Shown here one piece after another: positions 39,716-63,078 of a stretch of 64,000 bases of DNA. The stretch spans positions 47,577,216-47,641,215 of the forward strand of contig NC_086385.1 of NCBI RefSeq assembly GCF_036588685.1, written 5' to 3'. The notes below the pieces were generated by a model. The model ran no database searches and was not told where the DNA came from. It was given only the letters and a program-made list of their open reading frames with translations. The stretch is from Mytilus trossulus (lineage: Eukaryota). Each line of letters opens with the position of its first letter. Within the stretch, counting starts at the first letter, position 1. Both the position numbers and the translations under genes were made by a program.

Positions 39716-40400
39716 AGTCATCAAATAACCCTTAATTTCATGTGTAATTTTTAAAAGTATACTTTTCTGTAATGTTAATATCTGGTTTGAGACTAGTCAC
39801 ATAAATTTGTTCAACAAACTATAAATTTGCTAGTGAGAGAACATCATTGGTATAGCGGAACGTAAAATTTAAGAATAATGCTATTGTCATTTGTAAAGAG
39901 AGAAGATCATGTGTGACATATTGTCATTATTGTAATCTATTCTATTTTCTCTATTGTGACCTTTAAAACTGATTACTAGATTTATAATTGCATGAGCAAC
40001 ATGAACATGCAACCGATATTCAAATATCACAAATGACAAAAACACAGACTGGTAGTCAAAACTACAACGATATCGACCAGGTGGGAGTAAGAATCATGAT
40101 TTCTGCATGCGCAAAAAGTTTTTTAATTTTAAGAAATTAATGTCAACCCACCGATAATATAAATTGATTCTCCTATTATATCGTCTTCCTTCAATTAAAG
40201 TAAGGGAAATAGAACCTCACGAACAGTAATTTAATCAAAGGATTTGACAAAAACCAATATCACTTTGTCGATGTGGGGTGTAAAATTAGAAAAGACGTGT
40301 ATATACTATTAAAACTACGATTAACGTAATTTCATTCTTATTCTAGATCAAGTTGGTTCAAACACCAATTGGTTATTTACTTGTTATCTGTCTACCGAAC

Positions 40401-40618
40401 ATGAAGGTTCTTTTATGTGCTCTCTTCTTTATTTTGTGCCATGGGCTTCAAGCGAAACATGAAGGTTTCCTCATTTAATGGTAAAGAAAGGATGGGGATT
40501 TCAAGCATCAATACCTTGTCTTTATCATGGAAAATTGTACTTTATTCCCGTCAAATTTACACGTTTCTGCTTCAGACATCCTAACTGTGAATGTAATGTG
40601 AACAGACTCGGTATATGA
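40401..40618 (+). pseudogene. Secreted peptide family B, copy B1 (4-Cys type), 1-nt frameshift
   Basis: As written: MKVLLCALFFILCHGLQAKHEGFLI*. Restoring one base in the T run at 40466-40468 gives a 72-aa precursor ending ...PHLMVKK-GWGFQASIPCLYHGKLYFIPVKFTRFCFRHPNCECNVNRLGI*, collinear with B2. Confidence 0.8.
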
Positions 40619-43185
40619 ATTCTTCTATTAAGTAAGAATTAGGTTAGCATATAATGAACATCAACAGGACAAAAATAAATGACATTTGATTCGAAGGATC
40701 CATGTTATGAACATAATTCTGTGAGAATTTGCCTCTATGTGAACATTAATTGAATAAAACAATAACGGTTTCTACCTCACTGTAGTGGCAGTGTTTTCTT
40801 GGTTTTGTTTTAGCGGAAATGAGGTTGTCTGTGTATCGTTCTACTAGACGGAGGCAGCTGTTTTAACATAAATACGTTCCCGTCGATGTTTTTGTTTTTT
40901 TACAAAATATGATAAGTCAATTTACAGACTTCCGTTGAAACAATTTATTTTGCTACAGTATGTTATTGCATCTTTACTTTTTTGTTCTATCTGTTAAATA
41001 TTGTTTTCTTAATTCAATATTTTTCTGATGTAGTATTTTGTTTATTTTATTTTCAAAATAAAATTATTTATAAGTTAAATGGCAGTTAGATTTAAACCTT
41101 TGTATATATCCGTTTTTAAATTAAAATTTTGTAACAATAATTAAACAGTACAGTTTTGAATCTAAACTGTGTAATAATAATTAAACAGTACAATATGTGA
41201 AAGCTCTGACTTATAGAAACATACAGCATGTCATATACAGCATGTACTACCTAATATTTGTTTACTTACGATAAAAGCATTGAATGTTTGGTTTCAGATG
41301 ACATTGGTCACACACAAGGATAGCCATTAATGTTTGTATATGTGTGTATCTCACCTTAACCCATATATGATGAAGGGTTTCTCGAAATATTCATACCCAT
41401 GCAGTTAAAACATGAAAAATGGTCAAAAATGGTGGACCTTACTTTTGTTCAGCACTGCTAATTATATTCAATATGCAAACCTCAAAATTGTATTGAGTTT
41501 AGAAATAGATGCATCTATAATGGTTTACTTTTTCAAATTGTTTTTTGGTTGGAGAGTTGTGTCATTGTCACTTACACCACATTTTCCTATATCTATCTAA
41601 ACTTAATTTGCCATAACAAAGAGGCGAAATAGACCAGAAGGACATTCAAACTCATAAGTAGAAAAAAAAATGTCAAAAAAGACAAACAGGCAAATAATAA
41701 TACACAAAACAATACATTTACAGAAAACTAAATGCTAAACAACAACCCCACCATAAACTTGGTGTGATCTCAGGTCTTCTGGAATAGTTATTATAATATT
41801 ACCAATTTCGGAAATTGTGCGATTCTTAAAATATGACACACAAAAAGGACTGACGAGGTTTGTGACTTAAACTTAAACTTAGGTATTGTAATTATAATAT
41901 ATTTTCCCTCTTTTTTCGAGGTCGATCAATCGTATGAATATACTTCAATATCTTTTTTTTACGTAAGATTTTTTTTAAAGACCTTGTGAAGAGGTTAAAC
42001 ACTTAGTCTAAGATCAGATTGCAGTCAACAACATTTTAATTTATTTTTATATTATTTGGACAGTTTGTGGCACACTTCAGACGTCAAACTGGTGTGTATG
42101 GTATGGAAGACATATTACCCCAATTATATCAGATGCATTTGCTAAAAGGACACTTTGTTCTAATAATGAAAGTGTCTGCTATTATTTTCATACCGATGTC
42201 CGAACAATTTGACAAAATAGTTAAAGCACATAATACGGTAAAAAATATATTGCCCAGAAATACAAAATACACACAAAAATGTAAATTCAGTCGTATCAAG
42301 AAAAAGAACAGCTAGAAAAATACGAATTTATTTTTTAAGCTGTTCTTATTTCTTCATATGACTGATTTTTGTTTTTGTTTTTTTGTTTGTTAATAAATTC
42401 AATTTGAAAATCATTTTTCTATGAGTAGAACAAATAATCAACAAAATCGACACCCATGCAAAACAACAACAATAAACAGTCAAACATTACTTTTGGACAC
42501 ATATTGCTAAAAAAAACTGCGTCTCAAAACTCTTGGTCGATAAATCTACTTAATGGTTGACTGCTTATAAGAGTTGTAAAAAATGACTTTTAAAACATAT
42601 GAAATATCAAAAGAGTTGTCTTCCTAAATCTTTGATTACTACTTTCGGAGGGAAATTCTGATCTAGATAATTAAATAACTTGTTTAGTTTTATCTGTTAA
42701 ACTTATGAGGACAGAATTTCCTTTCGGGTTATGCAAAATCGAACAATCCAAAGGTAAAATTACCAAAAAATTGAACACCGAGGAAATTCAAAAAGGAAAG
42801 TCCATAATCAAATGGCAGTATCAAAAGCTGTAATATTCCTGACTTGGTACAGTTAGCTAACGAGTTTTAAAAAAGCTATCTGTTAACCAGTTCAAGCAGA
42901 GTATTTATTTCAGTTTGTATCTACAATAAACTGTCTAACCGGAAATTCTAACATACGACCTAAATATAGATTTTTTTAAAATAAATTATCTTTATTCCGT
43001 TCAAAGTCAAAATAATTTTAAACTTTGCCCACTAAATTAAAATTACAAAGTGAAAGATAACAAATAAAGAGTTGAGAACAAAGATGATATTTTTTTCGGT
43101 GTTGTAACGACACTTTAAAGCACCGCATCTAAATTTAGCCCTAGTATCTATGATGAGTTTATTTAGACTATTTCACGGCAATCAG

Positions 43186-43340
43186 TTTTGAAGCAGGAGT
43201 GCACGGAGAAAACCACCGACCTTCGATAGGAAAACTGACAATCCTAGTCAATTAAGCGGGGTTCGAACTAACAACCTCTGTGTTGACTGGCTAGTGATTA
43301 CAGTAGGAACTACTTAGACCACTCGACCACCGAGGTCTCT
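43186..43340 (-). mobile_element. tRNA-derived SINE fragment
   Basis: Minus strand has an A-box (tggtcgagtggt), a B-box (gttcgaaccc) and a downstream ggtcggtggttttctccg core typical of mollusc SINEs. Confidence 0.65.
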
Positions 43341-43630
43341 GAGAAAAAAGAAATGATAAAATGCACGTCATATAATTTCCATGCAAACACGAACTTCTTA
43401 AAAACAAATCTTTTACTATTTTTGTTATTATATTTCAATGTCATATTTCTGAAATACTAAAGAAAATAATGGATTAATCCTGGTTTAAAGCTAGTTAATT
43501 CGTTTGCAACTAAGAAAGCGAAGAAACAAAAACGAAATAAAGATATAAGTCGAGTCATATCAATACAATAGTCTATAAAACTCTGAAAGTTATTAAACAC
43601 TGCTTTACAACTGATGGGCAAACTTGACAA

Positions 43631-44515
43631 TAGTTATCAAAGGTACCAGGATTATAATTTAGTACGCCAGACGCGCGTTTCGTCTACATAAAACTCATCC
43701 GTGACGCTAATATCGAATAATTTATAAAGCCAAACAAGAACAAAGTTGAAGAGCATTTAAAATCCAAAAGGTTGTGCCAAATACGTCGTAGGTAAATAAA
43801 GGCAACAGTAGTATACCGCTGTTCAAAACTCATAAATCCGGGGACAAAAAACAAAATCGGGGTAACAAACTAAAACCGAGGGAAACGCATTAAATATAAG
43901 AGGAGAACAACGACACAACACCGAAACGCAACACACAGAAACGGACCAAGCATCAGACAAAACACCACGAGAATAACAAATATAACATCAAAACCAAATA
44001 CATGAATTTGTGATAGACAAGTACCGTGCCACGTCTTATCTCAATATCTCAAAAATAAGAGAAAACACAAACTACTCAACGTTAAAATGCAACACACACA
44101 GAAACGAACAAAAATATAACAATGGCCATCTGCCTGACTTGGTACAGGACACTTTTAAAGGGGAATAAAAGTGGTGGGTTGAACCTGGTTTTGTAGCATG
44201 CCAAACCTTGCACTTTAATGGCAAAGTTAAATATAACATTGAAATGACAACATAATGTTACAAGACTACAATACAAATAAATAGGAGAACATAATAGACA
44301 AAGAAAAACATGATCAATAGATAACAAAAAGCATCAGGTTTAAAATAATGTTAATGTTCAATTTTAATGTAATCTTTGCCTGGGATAAGAAAATCCTTAC
44401 TTTTTCGAAAAAATTCAAAGTTTTATAAACACAAAATTTATAAAAATGACCACATTATTGATATTTATGTCAACATCGAAGTGTTGACTACTGGGCTGGT
44501 GATGCCCTCGTGAAA
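43631..44515 (-). mobile_element. Retrozyme-like family 1 unit interrupted by another dispersed repeat (about 43795-44345)
   Basis: Hammerhead at 43664-43707 with the core mutated to CGGATGA. Flanking segments match 12070-12240, 14560-14740, 28970-29098 and 63490-63665. Confidence 0.6.
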
Positions 44516-44728
44516 GGAAATAAACAGCGGTTCATCCAACCTTTTGAGCTAAAAGAAATTGACATCACCATGTCCATCAGGTAAAAAGACAAGGGGTTTG
44601 CTTATTTAGATTGTTAATTAGATTTGTACTTAAATGAGTAACAAGTGATTGAAGCTCTTGGAGGCAATTGTCAGCAATGCTCTTTAACTTCGTACTTAAT
44701 TTGGCCTTTTTAACTTTCTTGGCTTCGA

Positions 44729-44772
44729 GCGTCACTGATGAGGGTTTTGTTGACGAAACGCGCGTCTGGCGT
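44729..44772 (+). ncRNA. Minimal type I hammerhead motif with disrupted stem II
   Basis: gcgtca-CTGATGA-gggttttgttgac-GAAA-cGCGCg-TC-tggcgt. Confidence 0.6.
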
Positions 44773-45272
44773 ATATACAAAACTTAGTCCTGGTATCTAT
44801 GATGAGTTTATCACAGATCTCAAAAATTGCTTCACAAAACACAAATACAGGTAAAAACAAGGGTTATTTAATGATTTGACCGTCAAGTGTCAGCGATATC
44901 AATCAGATAAAGATCATTATTTTAGCGAGCAAAATAATTGTTTTTGTTATAGCTGAACCCACTAAAACCTGATATATACTATCATAGCAGCGAATATGTT
45001 ATGTTAATATACCCTTTCATCGTTATCTACCTTCAATTTTAAACGAAGGAAATAAAACATCACGAAAATTTCTATAATCCAATAAATCTGGAAACAAACA
45101 TCACGCTTTGTCTATGTGGGAGCTGCAATTATAACACGACATGTATATATGGTTACAACTACCATCATAATATTATAAATTTATGATGCTCCCAAAAGAT
45201 TTGTTTACAAAAACAGATAAATAAAAGGTATAATCAAAAACTGATTATATACTTTATGCCTTTCTAGCGAAC

Positions 45273-45506
45273 ATGAAGATTCTTATATGCGTTCTCTTCA
45301 TCGTTATGTTAAATGGACTCAATGCAGAAAATGAAATAACTCCTCGCTTAATGGTTAAGAGGACATGGGGGTTTAGAATATCATTCGCATGCCATTATAA
45401 AGGACGGTGGTTCTACATACCTGTTGGACTTGCTAGATTGCTATTACGTAAGAATTTTGTGAAGCACATTACAAATAAAGACAGGACACAAATTATTGAC
45501 ATTTGA
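45273..45506 (+). CDS. Secreted cationic prepropeptide family B, copy B2 (77 aa)
   Basis: MKILICVLFIVMLNGLNA-ENEITPRLMVKR-TWGFRISFACHYKGRWFYIPVGLARLLLRKNFVKHITNKDRTQIIDI. Signal-like N-terminus, dibasic site, mature part about +7. Same length as B4 and B5. Confidence 0.78.
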   Translation: MKILICVLFIVMLNGLNAENEITPRLMVKRTWGFRISFACHYKGRWFYIPVGLARLLLRKNFVKHITNKDRTQIIDI

Positions 45507-46659
45507 TTTTGAGGATCCATGTTATGAACAGACTTTTTGTGATAGTCTGTGTGAACATTTATCAAATAAATGAAAACTGATTCTACATTAACGTGATGAA
45601 AGGATACTGTTTTGGATGAAACGAGGACTTTGTGTTTGCTGTAATACTAGTTGGAGCAAGCTTTTTCAACCGGAATGAGTTCTCTGAGAAGTTCCTTATT
45701 CACAAAATATGATTGAGGTCAATTTACAGATTTACGTTGACACAATTCGCTATTCTACAGTATGTGCCCACTTTGCATTTATTCATGTTTTTTTTATATA
45801 TATCATTGTGTTTTTCTTTTTATTTTTACTATAAAAGTATTTATGGATTAAATGACAGTTACATTCGAACCTTAATTGATATACTTTCATCTTTTCATAT
45901 TTTTAAATTACCATTTTTGAACAGTACAAAGTGTACAAGTTCTGATTTATAACAAAAGACATTATGTTATATACAACGTTACTATTGTTCACACTCACTG
46001 TTGAATATGCAACAGTAGTATAACACCAATCCATGTATCAAACCTAACCAGGGGAACCACATCCACGATAAGAGGAAAACAGAAACAATGAACTGCTGCA
46101 AAAACAAACACATATAAACATAGACTATTTGATAACACTTACTACCATTATCTTGACTTCGTGCAGGATATTTTAAACTAAAATAATGAGTTGAACCTGA
46201 TGTCTTAGCTAGTCGGACCTCCCGCTTACTAGTATATGGCAATGTTGTCAATAATGTTAATATGACAACATAAGGTGACAGAAGTACCGTACAAATAAAC
46301 GAAAGAACACATAGGACAGACCAATACATAAATTGATATAATAATAGTACATAACAACATGGTAATAACAAAACAGCAACGGGTACCTTCCATTGAAATA
46401 CGAAAGTACACCAGTAGACAACAATAGAACTATGAACTGTGCGTCACAAGGTTATATCAATGCCACAAAACGTGACTTCACAGGTAAATTTCTAGAAATA
46501 GAAAATTAAATTATGATTAAGTTTGCAATTGTGTTATTTTATGACTTTGCTGACCAATACACGAATATTAATATTTAAACCATTATCGTGATGTCAGCTA
46601 ATTCATTTGCCATTGATTCTTTTTCTGGAATCAACACTTCCTGAACGTATCGTTAATAA

Positions 46660-50686: not shown

Positions 50687-50913
50687 ATGAAGTTTCATTT
50701 AGCTGTTCTCGTCATTATATTGTGTCATGGGCTCCATGCAAAAAGAAAACTATTCCTCATCTAATGGAAAAGAAAGCATGGGGATTCAGAGCACAATTAG
50801 CTTGTAATTATAATTGAAAATGGTACTCTATTCATGTACATGATGTAGGACTTACCAAATTATGTTACAGACATCCCAAATGTTATTGTTCTGTGAAAAG
50901 ATTTCGAAGATAA
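50687..50913 (+). pseudogene. Secreted peptide family B, copy B3 (4-Cys type), frameshift plus nonsense codon
   Basis: MKFHLAVLVIILCHGLHA.., a 1-nt deletion near 50740-50750, then PHLMEKK-AWGFRAQLACNYN*KWYSIHVHDVGLTKLCYRHPKCYCSVKRFRR*. TGA at 50815-50817 where B1, B2 and B5 have GGA. Confidence 0.8.
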
Positions 50914-55627: not shown

Positions 55628-55861
55628 ATGAAGATTCTTATATGCGTTCTCGTCATCGTTTTGTTATATGGACACAATGCAGGAAATGAAATAATTCCTC
55701 ATATAATGGCAAAGAGATCATGGGGATTTCGTTTATCATTCGCACGCCATTATAAAGAACGGTGGTTTAACATCCCGGTACGACTTGCTAGATTGCTTTT
55801 ACGTAAGAATGTTTTAAAGCATATTATAAACAAAGACAGAACACAAATTATTGACAGTTGA
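55628..55861 (+). CDS. Secreted cationic prepropeptide family B, copy B4 (77 aa, Cys-free mature region)
   Basis: MKILICVLVIVLLYGHNA-GNEIIPHIMAKR-SWGFRLSFARHYKERWFNIPVRLARLLLRKNVLKHIINKDRTQIIDS. Mature part about +8. Confidence 0.75.
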   Translation: MKILICVLVIVLLYGHNAGNEIIPHIMAKRSWGFRLSFARHYKERWFNIPVRLARLLLRKNVLKHIINKDRTQIIDS

Positions 55862-62844: not shown

Positions 62845-63078
62845 ATGAAGATTCTTTTTGTTGTTATCTTCATTGTTTTGTTACATGGACTCAGTGCAGA
62901 AAATGAAACAATTTCTCATAAAATGGCAAAGAAAACATGGGGATTTAGAATATCATTCGCATGCCATTATAATGGACGGTGGTTCTTCATTCCTGTACGA
63001 CTTGCAAGATTGCTATTATGTAAGAATTTTGTGAAGCATATTATAAACAAAGGCAGGACACACATTATTGACATTTGA
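62845..63078 (+). CDS. Secreted cationic prepropeptide family B, copy B5 (77 aa)
   Basis: The start ATG in caacATG at 62845 is homologous to the other copies. MKILFVVIFIVLLHGLSA-ENETISHKMAKK-TWGFRISFACHYNGRWFFIPVRLARLLLCKNFVKHIINKGRTHIIDI. Confidence 0.78.
   Translation: MKILFVVIFIVLLHGLSAENETISHKMAKKTWGFRISFACHYNGRWFFIPVRLARLLLCKNFVKHIINKGRTHIIDI

What the first reader, a model, noticed from the sequence alone, without database searches (positions are those of the whole stretch)
40568..40690. Family B changed its C-terminus: a 57-nt deletion removed the Cys tail and recruited 3'UTR as coding sequence
B1 and B3 end in C-(F/Y)RHP(N/K)-C-x-C followed by a stop. B2, B4 and B5 lack the block equivalent to 40568-40624 (three Cys codons plus the stop). 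Their C-terminal codons (cta tta cgt aag aat ... gac agg aca caa att att gac att tga) align with B1's sequence after its stop (ctattaagtaagaat...aacaggacaaaaataaatgacatttga). All three deleted copies keep an open frame of identical length (77 aa), while both 4-Cys copies are disabled. Inference: a disulfide-bonded ancestor became a linear cationic amphipathic peptide by exaptation of UTR, and the derived form then amplified.
Basis: partly seen in the sequence, partly recalled or inferred. Interest (0 to 1): 0.8.

Follow-up and report, generated by a model that had tools for sequence, protein, structure and literature searches.

The report
Hybrid mussel peptide genes with UTR-derived tail
Three neighbouring mussel genes for small secreted peptides lost their cysteine-rich end and now read on into former untranslated sequence, most likely because two sister genes were joined out of register; it is a neat but not unprecedented case of gene evolution, and it is not yet known whether the new peptides are made.

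Summary
B2, B4 and B5 lack the 57 nt that B1 has at 40568-40624. This block holds three Cys codons, seven more codons, the stop and 6 nt. Their last 21 codons align with B1's post-stop sequence (50 of 65 nt), and all three keep a 77-codon frame.

The genome holds 20 family loci. Fourteen have the C-x16-C-x5-C-x-C pattern, and B1, B3, B6, B7 and B8 stop at the same codon.

Two points change the story.
- Intact Cys-bearing copies (B6, B7, B8, B10) lie just beyond the window, so the Cys form was not replaced.
- The "deletion" is the switch point of a mosaic. Upstream of it B2/B4/B5 are sister to B7, downstream they are sister to B1 (100/100 support each way; AU p=0.003 and 4e-5; breakpoint at 45437-45449). 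Most likely a B7-type 5' half was joined out of register to a B1-type 3' UTR.

Function is uncertain. Three intact frames are unlikely under neutrality (roughly 1e-3), but the excess of synonymous changes is not significant. No RNA evidence was found, and the tail is not amphipathic.

The family is unnamed, with no Pfam match and no hit in print. Co-option of 3' UTR and hybrid genes in tandem arrays are both known kinds. The scan had noted B1's scaffold before (s1-830489).

The parts
40401..40618 (+). B1: 4-Cys copy, broken in this assembly by one missing base near 40464; stop TGA at 40616-40618
40568..40624 (+). The 57-nt block of B1 that B2/B4/B5 lack: Cys2, Cys3, Cys4, seven more codons, the stop and 6 nt
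40625..40689 (+). B1 3' UTR stretch homologous to the coding tail of B2/B4/B5 (50 of 65 nt identical to B2); not open in frame in B1
45273..45506 (+). B2: intact 77-codon ORF plus TGA; signal peptide, short pro-region ending KR, 47-aa peptide with one Cys
45437..45449 (+). Junction in B2: switch from B7-like to B1-like sequence, at the place of the missing block
   Evidence: 67:31 on the left, 17:74 on the right, Fisher 5e-12; all alignments to B7 end at +166, those to B1 start at +168
45441..45503 (+). B2 tail codons derived from 3' UTR (LLLRKNFVKHITNKDRTQIIDI)
50687..50913 (+). B3: 4-Cys copy, broken by a frameshift, an in-frame TGA and a 9-nt insertion; stop TAA at 50911-50913; sister of intact B6
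55628..55861 (+). B4: intact 77-codon ORF plus TGA, no Cys in the mature part (Cys40 replaced by Arg); tail from 55796
62845..63078 (+). B5: intact 77-codon ORF plus TGA, two Cys (Cys40 and a new Cys59 in the tail); tail from 63013
40300..40305 (+). TATATA about 100 nt upstream of the B1 ATG, inside an upstream block alignable in all five window copies (B3 reads AGTACA at that place); read as a likely TATA box (inference)
40753..40758 (+). AATAAA in the conserved block TATGTGAACATT..AATAAA downstream of the ORFs; read as a likely polyadenylation signal (inference)

Best explanation
Family B is an undescribed mussel family of single-coding-exon genes. Each encodes a small secreted precursor: a signal peptide, a short pro-region ending in a conserved dibasic site, and a peptide of about 42 aa with four Cys (C-x16-C-x5-C-x-C). 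B2, B4 and B5 descend from one hybrid gene. In that gene, the promoter and first 55-56 codons of a B7-lineage gene became joined to the 3' UTR of a B1-lineage gene, 6 nt past its stop codon. The join removed Cys2-4 and the stop, and it happened to stay in frame. Translation therefore runs 21 codons into former UTR, up to a TGA that already lay there. The hybrid then duplicated twice. An out-of-register exchange between tandem paralogues is the simplest route (inferred). The hybrid copies lie between B1 and B7 in the array, as that route predicts. All three copies have kept their frames, so they are probably still genes. What the peptides do is unknown, and whether the new tail matters for it is not shown. 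A secreted defence or signalling peptide is my guess.
For: Polarity:
- 14 of 20 family loci in the genome have the 4-Cys pattern, including copies on chromosomes 2, 4 and 10.
- Of 7 outside relatives that look like family members, 4 show the full C-x5-C-x-C end. P0005 loses it at a change of frame, and P0007 and P0008 keep two Cys. None has the B2-type tail.
- The stop falls at the same codon in B1, B3, B6, B7 and B8.

UTR origin:
- B2's tail matches B1's post-stop sequence at 50 of 65 nt.

Mosaic:
- Alignments of B2, B4 and B5 to B7 run from as far as -833 to exactly +166. Alignments to B1 run from +168 to +650.
- The 5' tree gives (B2,B4,B5,B7) at 100/100 and the 3' tree gives (B1,(B2,B4,B5)) at 100/100.
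- AU tests reject the swapped groupings, p=0.003 and 4e-5.
- Informative sites are 67:31 B7-like on the left and 17:74 B1-like on the right, with the best breakpoint at the gap.
- Path lengths fit one event: H to B7 is about 0.34 in the 5' tree and H to B1 about 0.34 in the 3' tree, while B1 and B7 are far apart on both sides (newicks).

Maintenance:
- There are 0 indels in 231 nt of coding sequence, against 6-10 indel events per pair in about 650 nt of flanks.
- In a neutral simulation all three frames survive with probability 0.011-0.023 for substitutions, times 0.016-0.044 for indels.
- Contigs of two other coded organisms cover the B2 frame without gaps, with two listed changes: one synonymous and one Thr72 to Ile.
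Against: - No RNA run holds the gene. The one 'RNA?' run laid covers only 45533-45760, which runs past the poly(A) signal.
- No B2-type protein exists in the two large protein collections.
- The excess of synonymous changes is not significant: 16 synonymous against 38 non-synonymous, p=0.15; in the tail 4 against 7, p=0.17. There is no third-position excess (17, 15 and 20 variable sites).
- Coding divergence (0.147-0.165) is barely below that of the flanks (0.149-0.238).
- For the tail alone, staying open has a chance probability of about 0.1.
- The stem of the hybrid clade is 0.02 in the 5' tree but 0.15 in the 3' tree. That fits a single event only if rates differ or the copies later homogenised.
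- The AU groupings were named after I had seen the trees.
- The exact join cannot be rebuilt, and I could not establish any microhomology.
Confidence: 0.62

Rival explanations
1. A plain 57-nt in-frame deletion occurred within one gene lineage. The mosaic arose later by gene conversion between paralogues, with tracts that stopped at the indel because homology ends there.
For: The hybrid clade's stem is much shorter in the 5' tree (0.02) than in the 3' tree (0.15), as if the 5' half had been exchanged with the B7 lineage later than the 3' half split from B1. B7 carries a 65-nt tandem duplication of nearly the same block, so this spot can change by local slippage.
Against: This needs at least two events whose edges coincide with the gap to within about 12 nt on both sides. 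B7-like sequence extends at least 700-830 nt upstream in B5, which is long for a conversion tract. B1 ranks among the most distant paralogues of the hybrid copies in the 5' half and by far the closest in the 3' half.
Confidence: 0.2
2. B2, B4 and B5 are dead by-products of array rearrangement. Their frames are open by luck, and no peptide with the new tail is made.
For: No RNA evidence was found. The excess of synonymous changes is not significant and there is no codon-position pattern. Coding divergence is about equal to flank divergence. Three of the eight other copies in this array (B1, B3, B9) are broken, so decay is common here. The end of the tail overlaps a UTR motif (TTGACATTT) shared with most other copies, so its conservation need not be at the protein level.
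Against: Three frames of 77 codons with no stop and no indel, at 15-19% divergence, have a joint probability of roughly 2e-4 to 1e-3 in my rough neutral model. B3, at similar divergence from its sister B6, already has three lesions. NG86 dN/dS is 0.33-0.66 overall and 0.20-0.35 in the mature N-terminal part.
Confidence: 0.3
3. Reverse polarity: the short form is ancestral, and B1 and B3 gained the 57-nt block by insertion.
For: None found.
Against: The block, with its Cys pattern, is present in 14 of 20 loci across five chromosomes, and its full Cys end is present in 4 of the 7 outside relatives. The block-less copies are one young clade.
Confidence: 0.01

Closest known systems
De novo protein C-termini by co-option of 3' UTR after loss of the stop codon (Andreatta et al. 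2015, PMC4494051; I saw the search listing and the start of the abstract only)
   Same: The ancestral stop is removed, translation runs into former 3' UTR up to the next in-frame stop, and the new codons are homologous to UTR in relatives.
   Different: Here the stop was not mutated. It was removed together with a disulfide module, at a junction between two paralogues, so the new tail replaces part of the old protein rather than extending it.
Hybrid genes from out-of-register exchange in tandem arrays (haemoglobin Lepore, red/green opsin hybrids; recalled, not from any call)
   Same: The 5' half comes from one paralogue and the 3' half from another. There is a single switch point, and the hybrid lies between the parent types in the array.
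   Different: The classic cases cross over in register within homologous coding sequence and keep the protein length. Here the join is 57 nt out of register and lands in a UTR.
Myticalins, linear cationic mussel antimicrobial peptides (PMC12294457, passages read; PMC5577615, listing only)
   Same: Both are mussel multigene families of short secreted cationic peptides with few or no Cys.
   Different: Myticalin precursors run signal, mature peptide, dibasic site, anionic extension, and their coding sequence is split over exons 2 and 3. Family B runs signal, pro-region, dibasic site, peptide, in one uninterrupted coding stretch. No sequence similarity was found.
CRP-I cysteine-rich peptide clusters of Mytilus (PMC10138031, passages read; PMC4558851, listing only)
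   Same: Both are tandem clusters in which intact genes are mixed with many pseudogenes, and both have a pre-pro-peptide layout.
   Different: CRP-I has six Cys (C-C-CC-C-C, knottin) and an ORF spanning three exons, after a short 5' UTR exon. Family B has four Cys in another pattern and one coding exon.

Membership tests
Family B (undescribed mussel 4-Cys secreted peptide family) | Signal peptide, short pro-region, conserved dibasic site (K29 invariant), then W-G ... C-x3-G-x-W-x2-(I/V)-P core | tested here: met
   Alignments A1 and A2. B2, B4 and B5 hit the family profile at E 3e-25 to 3e-28.
Family B (undescribed mussel 4-Cys secreted peptide family) | C-terminal C-x5-C-x-C module followed within 2-11 codons by the stop | tested here: not met
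   Absent from B2, B4 and B5. They are derived members that lack this module.
3' UTR co-opted as a new C-terminus | The new codons are homologous to sequence that lies after the stop codon in relatives | tested here: met
   50 of 65 nt identical to B1's post-stop stretch. The stop is at the same codon in five paralogues.
3' UTR co-opted as a new C-terminus | The new coding stretch is kept by selection | tested here: inconclusive
   Tail dN/dS is 0.18-0.64. The event count is 4 synonymous against 7 non-synonymous, p=0.17. The chance of the tail staying open under neutrality is about 0.1.
Hybrid gene from exchange between tandem paralogues | Strongly supported, conflicting trees on the two sides of a single breakpoint | tested here: met
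Hybrid gene from exchange between tandem paralogues | The hybrid lies between the two parent types in the array | tested here: met
   The order on chromosome 13 is B1, B2, B3, B4, B5, B6, B7 (coordinates).
Myticalins | Tripartite precursor with an anionic C-terminal extension; coding sequence split by a phase-1 intron | tested here: not met
   The frame is uninterrupted and the pro-region lies before the peptide, against the description in PMC12294457.
CRP-I | Six Cys in the C-C-CC-C-C array, with an ORF spanning three exons | tested here: not met
   against PMC10138031.
Antimicrobial peptide (function) | Expression in immune or mucosal tissue and killing activity | not testable with these tools
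   No RNA holder was found and there is no assay. The net charge of +6 to +10 is only suggestive.

The most novel reading that the evidence does not exclude
The hybrid genes are expressed and encode a working new peptide class. In one step, a single out-of-register join between two paralogues swapped a disulfide module for a 21-residue tail drawn from UTR. The copies are now settling the leftover unpaired Cys in different ways: it is kept in B2, removed in B4, and re-paired by a new Cys in the tail in B5. The flanks of the Cys block would then be a recurrent rearrangement spot, since B7 duplicated nearly the same block. That would give the family a built-in way to shuffle its C-terminus.
Probability: 0.2. 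Interest if true: 0.6.

Novelty: new member of a known kind. Interest (0 to 1): 0.4.

Why it matters
If the hybrid peptides are made and active, this is an unusually clear case of how a fast-evolving family of secreted peptides gains a new form in one step. A structural module is lost, non-coding sequence becomes protein, and parent types, pseudogenes and derived copies are still side by side in one array. It would also add an unnamed peptide family (20 loci, no Pfam match, no source name beyond 'hypothetical protein') to the mussel repertoire. If the copies are silent, it is simply a tidy example of the rearrangement and decay that are usual in mussel peptide gene clusters.

Tried and rejected
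- **Pfam** on B2, B4 and B5: no family at E up to 10.
- **Word-indexed protein search** with B2: no candidate.
- **Profile search** of 1.84 billion representatives: 8 hits. Seven look like family members, all unnamed or 'hypothetical protein'. One (P0003) is a bacterial repeat protein that I take as spurious.
- **ESM Atlas** with B6: best score 0.80, to spider-toxin clusters. This is below the level the tool calls more than a lead, and I read it only as 'small secreted Cys-rich precursor'.
- **AlphaFold2** of the B2 and B6 precursors: both show a hairpin (37-50), a helix (51-59) and a short strand, at mean pLDDT 65.6 and 70.8. **Foldseek** against PDB found nothing at E up to 0.001.
- **Tandem Repeats Finder** missed the B7 duplication. 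The repeat finder found it.
rejected by the hydrophobic moment.
- **B7's duplicated block as the reciprocal product of the join**: considered and dropped. B7 has a B7-type 5' half, and its two block copies are 93% alike, which is too young.
- **A model in which B3 and B6 are the duplicated spacers of the same exchange**: not supported. Their divergence (0.12-0.18) is about half that expected.
- **Literature**: no paper holds any of three peptide strings from the family. Two keyword searches on mussel Cys-rich and antimicrobial peptide families listed no paper on a 4-Cys family of this layout.
- **Earlier findings by words**: nothing relevant.
Full report
**What is there.** The window is AT-rich animal DNA, about 30% G+C. 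Earlier notes of this scan name the genome as the mussel Mytilus trossulus; I did not check that name. BLAST of the flagged region against the window finds five copies of a gene-sized unit of about 700 nt, all on the + strand and 5-7 kb apart. Each unit has:
- an alignable upstream block with TATATA about 100 nt before the ATG (B3 reads AGTACA at that place);
- one uninterrupted reading frame;
- a strongly conserved downstream block ending in AATAAA (or ATTAAA in B5).

I read these as small single-coding-exon genes. The promoter and poly(A) assignments are inference.

**Check of the observation.** The alignments confirm that B2, B4 and B5 lack exactly 57 nt that B1 has at 40568-40624 and that B3 also has.
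- In B1 the block reads C-FRHPN-C-E-C-NVNRLGI-stop plus 6 nt. In B3 it reads C-YRHPK-C-Y-C-SVKRFRR-stop. The stop therefore follows seven codons after the last Cys.
- B2, B4 and B5 each give a 77-aa frame.
- Their last 66 nt align with B1 40625-40689 at 50 of 65 positions with one gap column. In B1 that stretch is closed by stops in frame.
- B1 has a single lesion, one missing base near 40464. B3 has a missing base, an in-frame TGA and a 9-nt insertion.

**The family is larger than the window shows.** Searching the whole assembly with B2, and then with a family profile, gives 20 loci: 11 in this array on chromosome 13 (B1-B11), and 9 on chromosomes 2, 4, 6 and 10.
- By my reading of the translations, 14 of the 20 have the pattern C-x16-C-x5-C-x-C.
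- B9 (broken) has Tyr at the third Cys. B7 has Ser at the fourth. One locus on chromosome 6 keeps two Cys. Only B2, B4 and B5 lack the whole C-terminal module.
- B6, B7, B8 and B10, just beyond the window's end, are intact.
- B1, B3, B6, B7 and B8 stop at the same aligned codon, as TGA, TAA, TAA, TAG and TGA.
- A profile search of 1.84 billion representative proteins found 7 relatives that look like family members. Four show the full C-x5-C-x-C end, one (P0005) loses it at a change of frame, and two (P0007, P0008) keep two Cys. All are unnamed or 'hypothetical protein', and none has the B2-type tail.

Together this settles the polarity. The Cys form and its stop are ancestral, the sequence after the stop was UTR, and the block-less form is derived. 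It also shows that the Cys form has not been replaced.

**The gap is a recombination junction.**
- Pairwise BLAST of 3.2-kb loci shows that every block-less copy aligns with B7 from far upstream (to -833 in B5) down to exactly +166. It aligns with B1 from +168 (B1 +224) to about +650. It does not align with B7 downstream at all.
- By segment, B1 is among the least similar paralogues in the 5' flank and N-terminal coding part (59-68%), and B7 is the most similar (70-78%). After the gap, B1 is by far the closest (72-75% in the 110 nt past the stop, against 48-50% for B7).
- Maximum-likelihood trees of the two partitions conflict with full support. The 5' tree gives (B2,B4,B5,B7) at 100/100. The 3' tree gives (B1,(B2,B4,B5)) at 100/100.
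- AU tests reject B1 with the hybrids in the 5' part (p=0.003) and B7 with them in the 3' part (p=4e-5). I named these groups after seeing the trees.
- Sites where the three hybrids agree with only one of B1 and B7 run 67:31 for B7 on the left and 17:74 for B1 on the right. The best breakpoint lies between +164 and +176 of B2 (window 45437-45449; Fisher 5e-12, the best of about 180 cut points).
- B1 and B7 are distant from each other on both sides (path about 0.76 and 0.93). The hybrids sit about 0.34 from B7 on the left and about 0.34 from B1 on the right.

Making the hybrid lineage the chimera needs one event. Making B1 or B7 the chimera needs more.

The simplest reading is an out-of-register join of a B7-lineage 5' half to a B1-lineage 3' UTR. 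The hybrids do lie between B1 and B7 in the array.

One result does not fit a single clean event. The stem of the hybrid clade is 0.02 in the 5' tree and 0.15 in the 3' tree. For that reason I keep the rival (a plain deletion followed by conversion tracts bounded by the indel) at 0.2. I could not rebuild the join or show microhomology.

**Is the derived form a working gene?**

In favour:
- The three copies differ by 15-19% overall and by 14.7-16.5% in the coding part, yet have no indel in 231 nt. Their flanks show 6-10 indel events per pair in about 650 nt.
- In a rough neutral simulation, all three frames survive the substitutions with probability 0.011-0.023. They escape frameshifts with probability 0.016-0.044.
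- B3, similarly diverged from its intact sister B6, already has three lesions.
- NG86 dN/dS is 0.33-0.66 overall and 0.20-0.35 in the N-terminal mature part.
- Contigs of two other coded organisms cover the B2 frame without gaps: X2 record 23, and X3 records 29 and 30. A third (X10 record 7) has 16 gaps whose places were not shown.
- The two in-frame differences listed are 45461 G>A (synonymous) and 45487 C>T (Thr72 to Ile). A further 187 differences and 31 indels were not listed.

Against:
- An event-based count gives 16 synonymous against 38 non-synonymous changes, where neutrality expects 23% synonymous (p=0.15). The tail gives 4 against 7 (p=0.17).
- Variable sites are spread 17, 15 and 20 over the three codon positions.
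- Coding divergence hardly differs from flank divergence.
- For the tail alone, staying open has a chance probability of about 0.1.
- The tail's end overlaps a UTR motif shared with other copies.
- No run on record as RNA holds the gene. The one guessed RNA run that I laid covers only 45533-45760, beyond the poly(A) signal.

I put 'still a gene' at about 0.6-0.7, and 'the tail itself is under selection' as not shown.

**What the peptides look like.**
- After the dibasic site the hybrids give 47-aa peptides of net charge +7 or +8, with 1 (B2), 0 (B4) and 2 (B5) Cys. The Cys forms give 40-42 aa, +6 to +10.
- The tail is not an amphipathic helix. Its hydrophobic moment is 0.09-0.22, against a shuffle mean of 0.28.
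- AlphaFold2 gives the same hairpin, helix and strand layout for B2 (pLDDT 65.6) and B6 (70.8), with a low-confidence tail in B2. Both predictions lean on the same shallow alignment.
- Foldseek found no PDB match. The wider structure library was not available.
- Pfam finds nothing. The Atlas hits to spider toxins at 0.80 are below the tool's own bar.
- Function is therefore a guess. A secreted defence or signalling peptide fits the layout, the charge, the tandem array and the many pseudogenes, which resemble the mussel CRP-I clusters described in PMC10138031 (passages).

**Comparison with what is known.**
- Conversion of 3' UTR into new C-termini is a described process (PMC4494051; listing and start of abstract).
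- Hybrid genes from unequal exchange in tandem arrays are textbook knowledge (recalled).
- The family is not a myticalin and not a CRP-I, because the precursor order, exon structure and Cys pattern all differ.
- No paper holds any of three family peptide strings. Two keyword searches listed no paper on a 4-Cys family of this layout. Supplements, which I could not open, might.

**Verdict.** The mechanism is better described as a hybrid of two paralogues than as a simple deletion. The claims of replacement and of an amphipathic linear peptide do not hold, and function is open. It is a clear new example of known evolutionary processes in an unnamed peptide family, of moderate interest.

Noticed in passing
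L004:1667-1790 (B7, chromosome 13, about 22 kb beyond the window's end): B7 carries a tandem duplication of almost the same block that B2/B4/B5 lack: two 59-nt copies, 93% alike, 65 nt apart, starting 2 nt before the Cys2 codon. The first copy keeps the stop, so the protein is unchanged. The flanks of the block may be prone to rearrangement.
   Followed up: partly
G000:C13:47651485-47701168 (loci L004-L007, L009, L033): The array continues beyond the window with B6-B11. B6, B7, B8 and B10 are intact by ORF scan, B11 reads open in translation, and B9 is broken. Nine more family loci lie on chromosomes 2, 4, 6 and 10.
   Followed up: partly
window 40383-40524: A contig of another coded organism (X2, record 17) has 143 letters over these 142 places. 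This stretch includes B1's single frameshift site, so B1 may be intact in that organism.
   Followed up: no
window 55628-55861 and 62845-63078: After the loss of Cys2-4, the leftover Cys40 is kept in B2, replaced by Arg in B4, and joined by a new Cys at residue 59 of the tail in B5. This may be three ways of dealing with an unpaired Cys, or simply drift.
   Followed up: no
window 40460-40466 and about 50744-50750: B1 and B3 each lack one base within a few bases of each other, in the A-rich pro-region, although they belong to different lineages.
   Followed up: no
window 41494-41877, 42646-43413, 43606-44949: Stretches between B1 and B2 take summed contig depths in the thousands to millions in all four runs laid. 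I take them as high-copy repeats, probably transposon remains.
   Followed up: no
L027 (G000:C6:74377597-74377797), P0007, P0008: A branch of the family keeps only two Cys (Cys1 and Cys3) and ends in an acidic, Tyr-rich tail. Change in Cys number is therefore not unique to B2/B4/B5.
   Followed up: no
L004:1501-1719, L006:1501-1713: B7 and B8 end in ...RFGR and ...RLGR. From recalled knowledge, Gly followed by a basic residue is the usual signal for C-terminal amidation, which would give RF-amide or RL-amide ends. Not tested.
   Followed up: no
window 40675-40689 and the same place in other copies: The motif TTGACATTT in the 3' UTR is shared by B1, B2, B5, B6 and B8, with one to three changes in B4, B9 and B10 (B3 and B7 differ more). 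In the hybrids it supplies the last codons and the TGA. It may be an RNA-level element.
   Followed up: no
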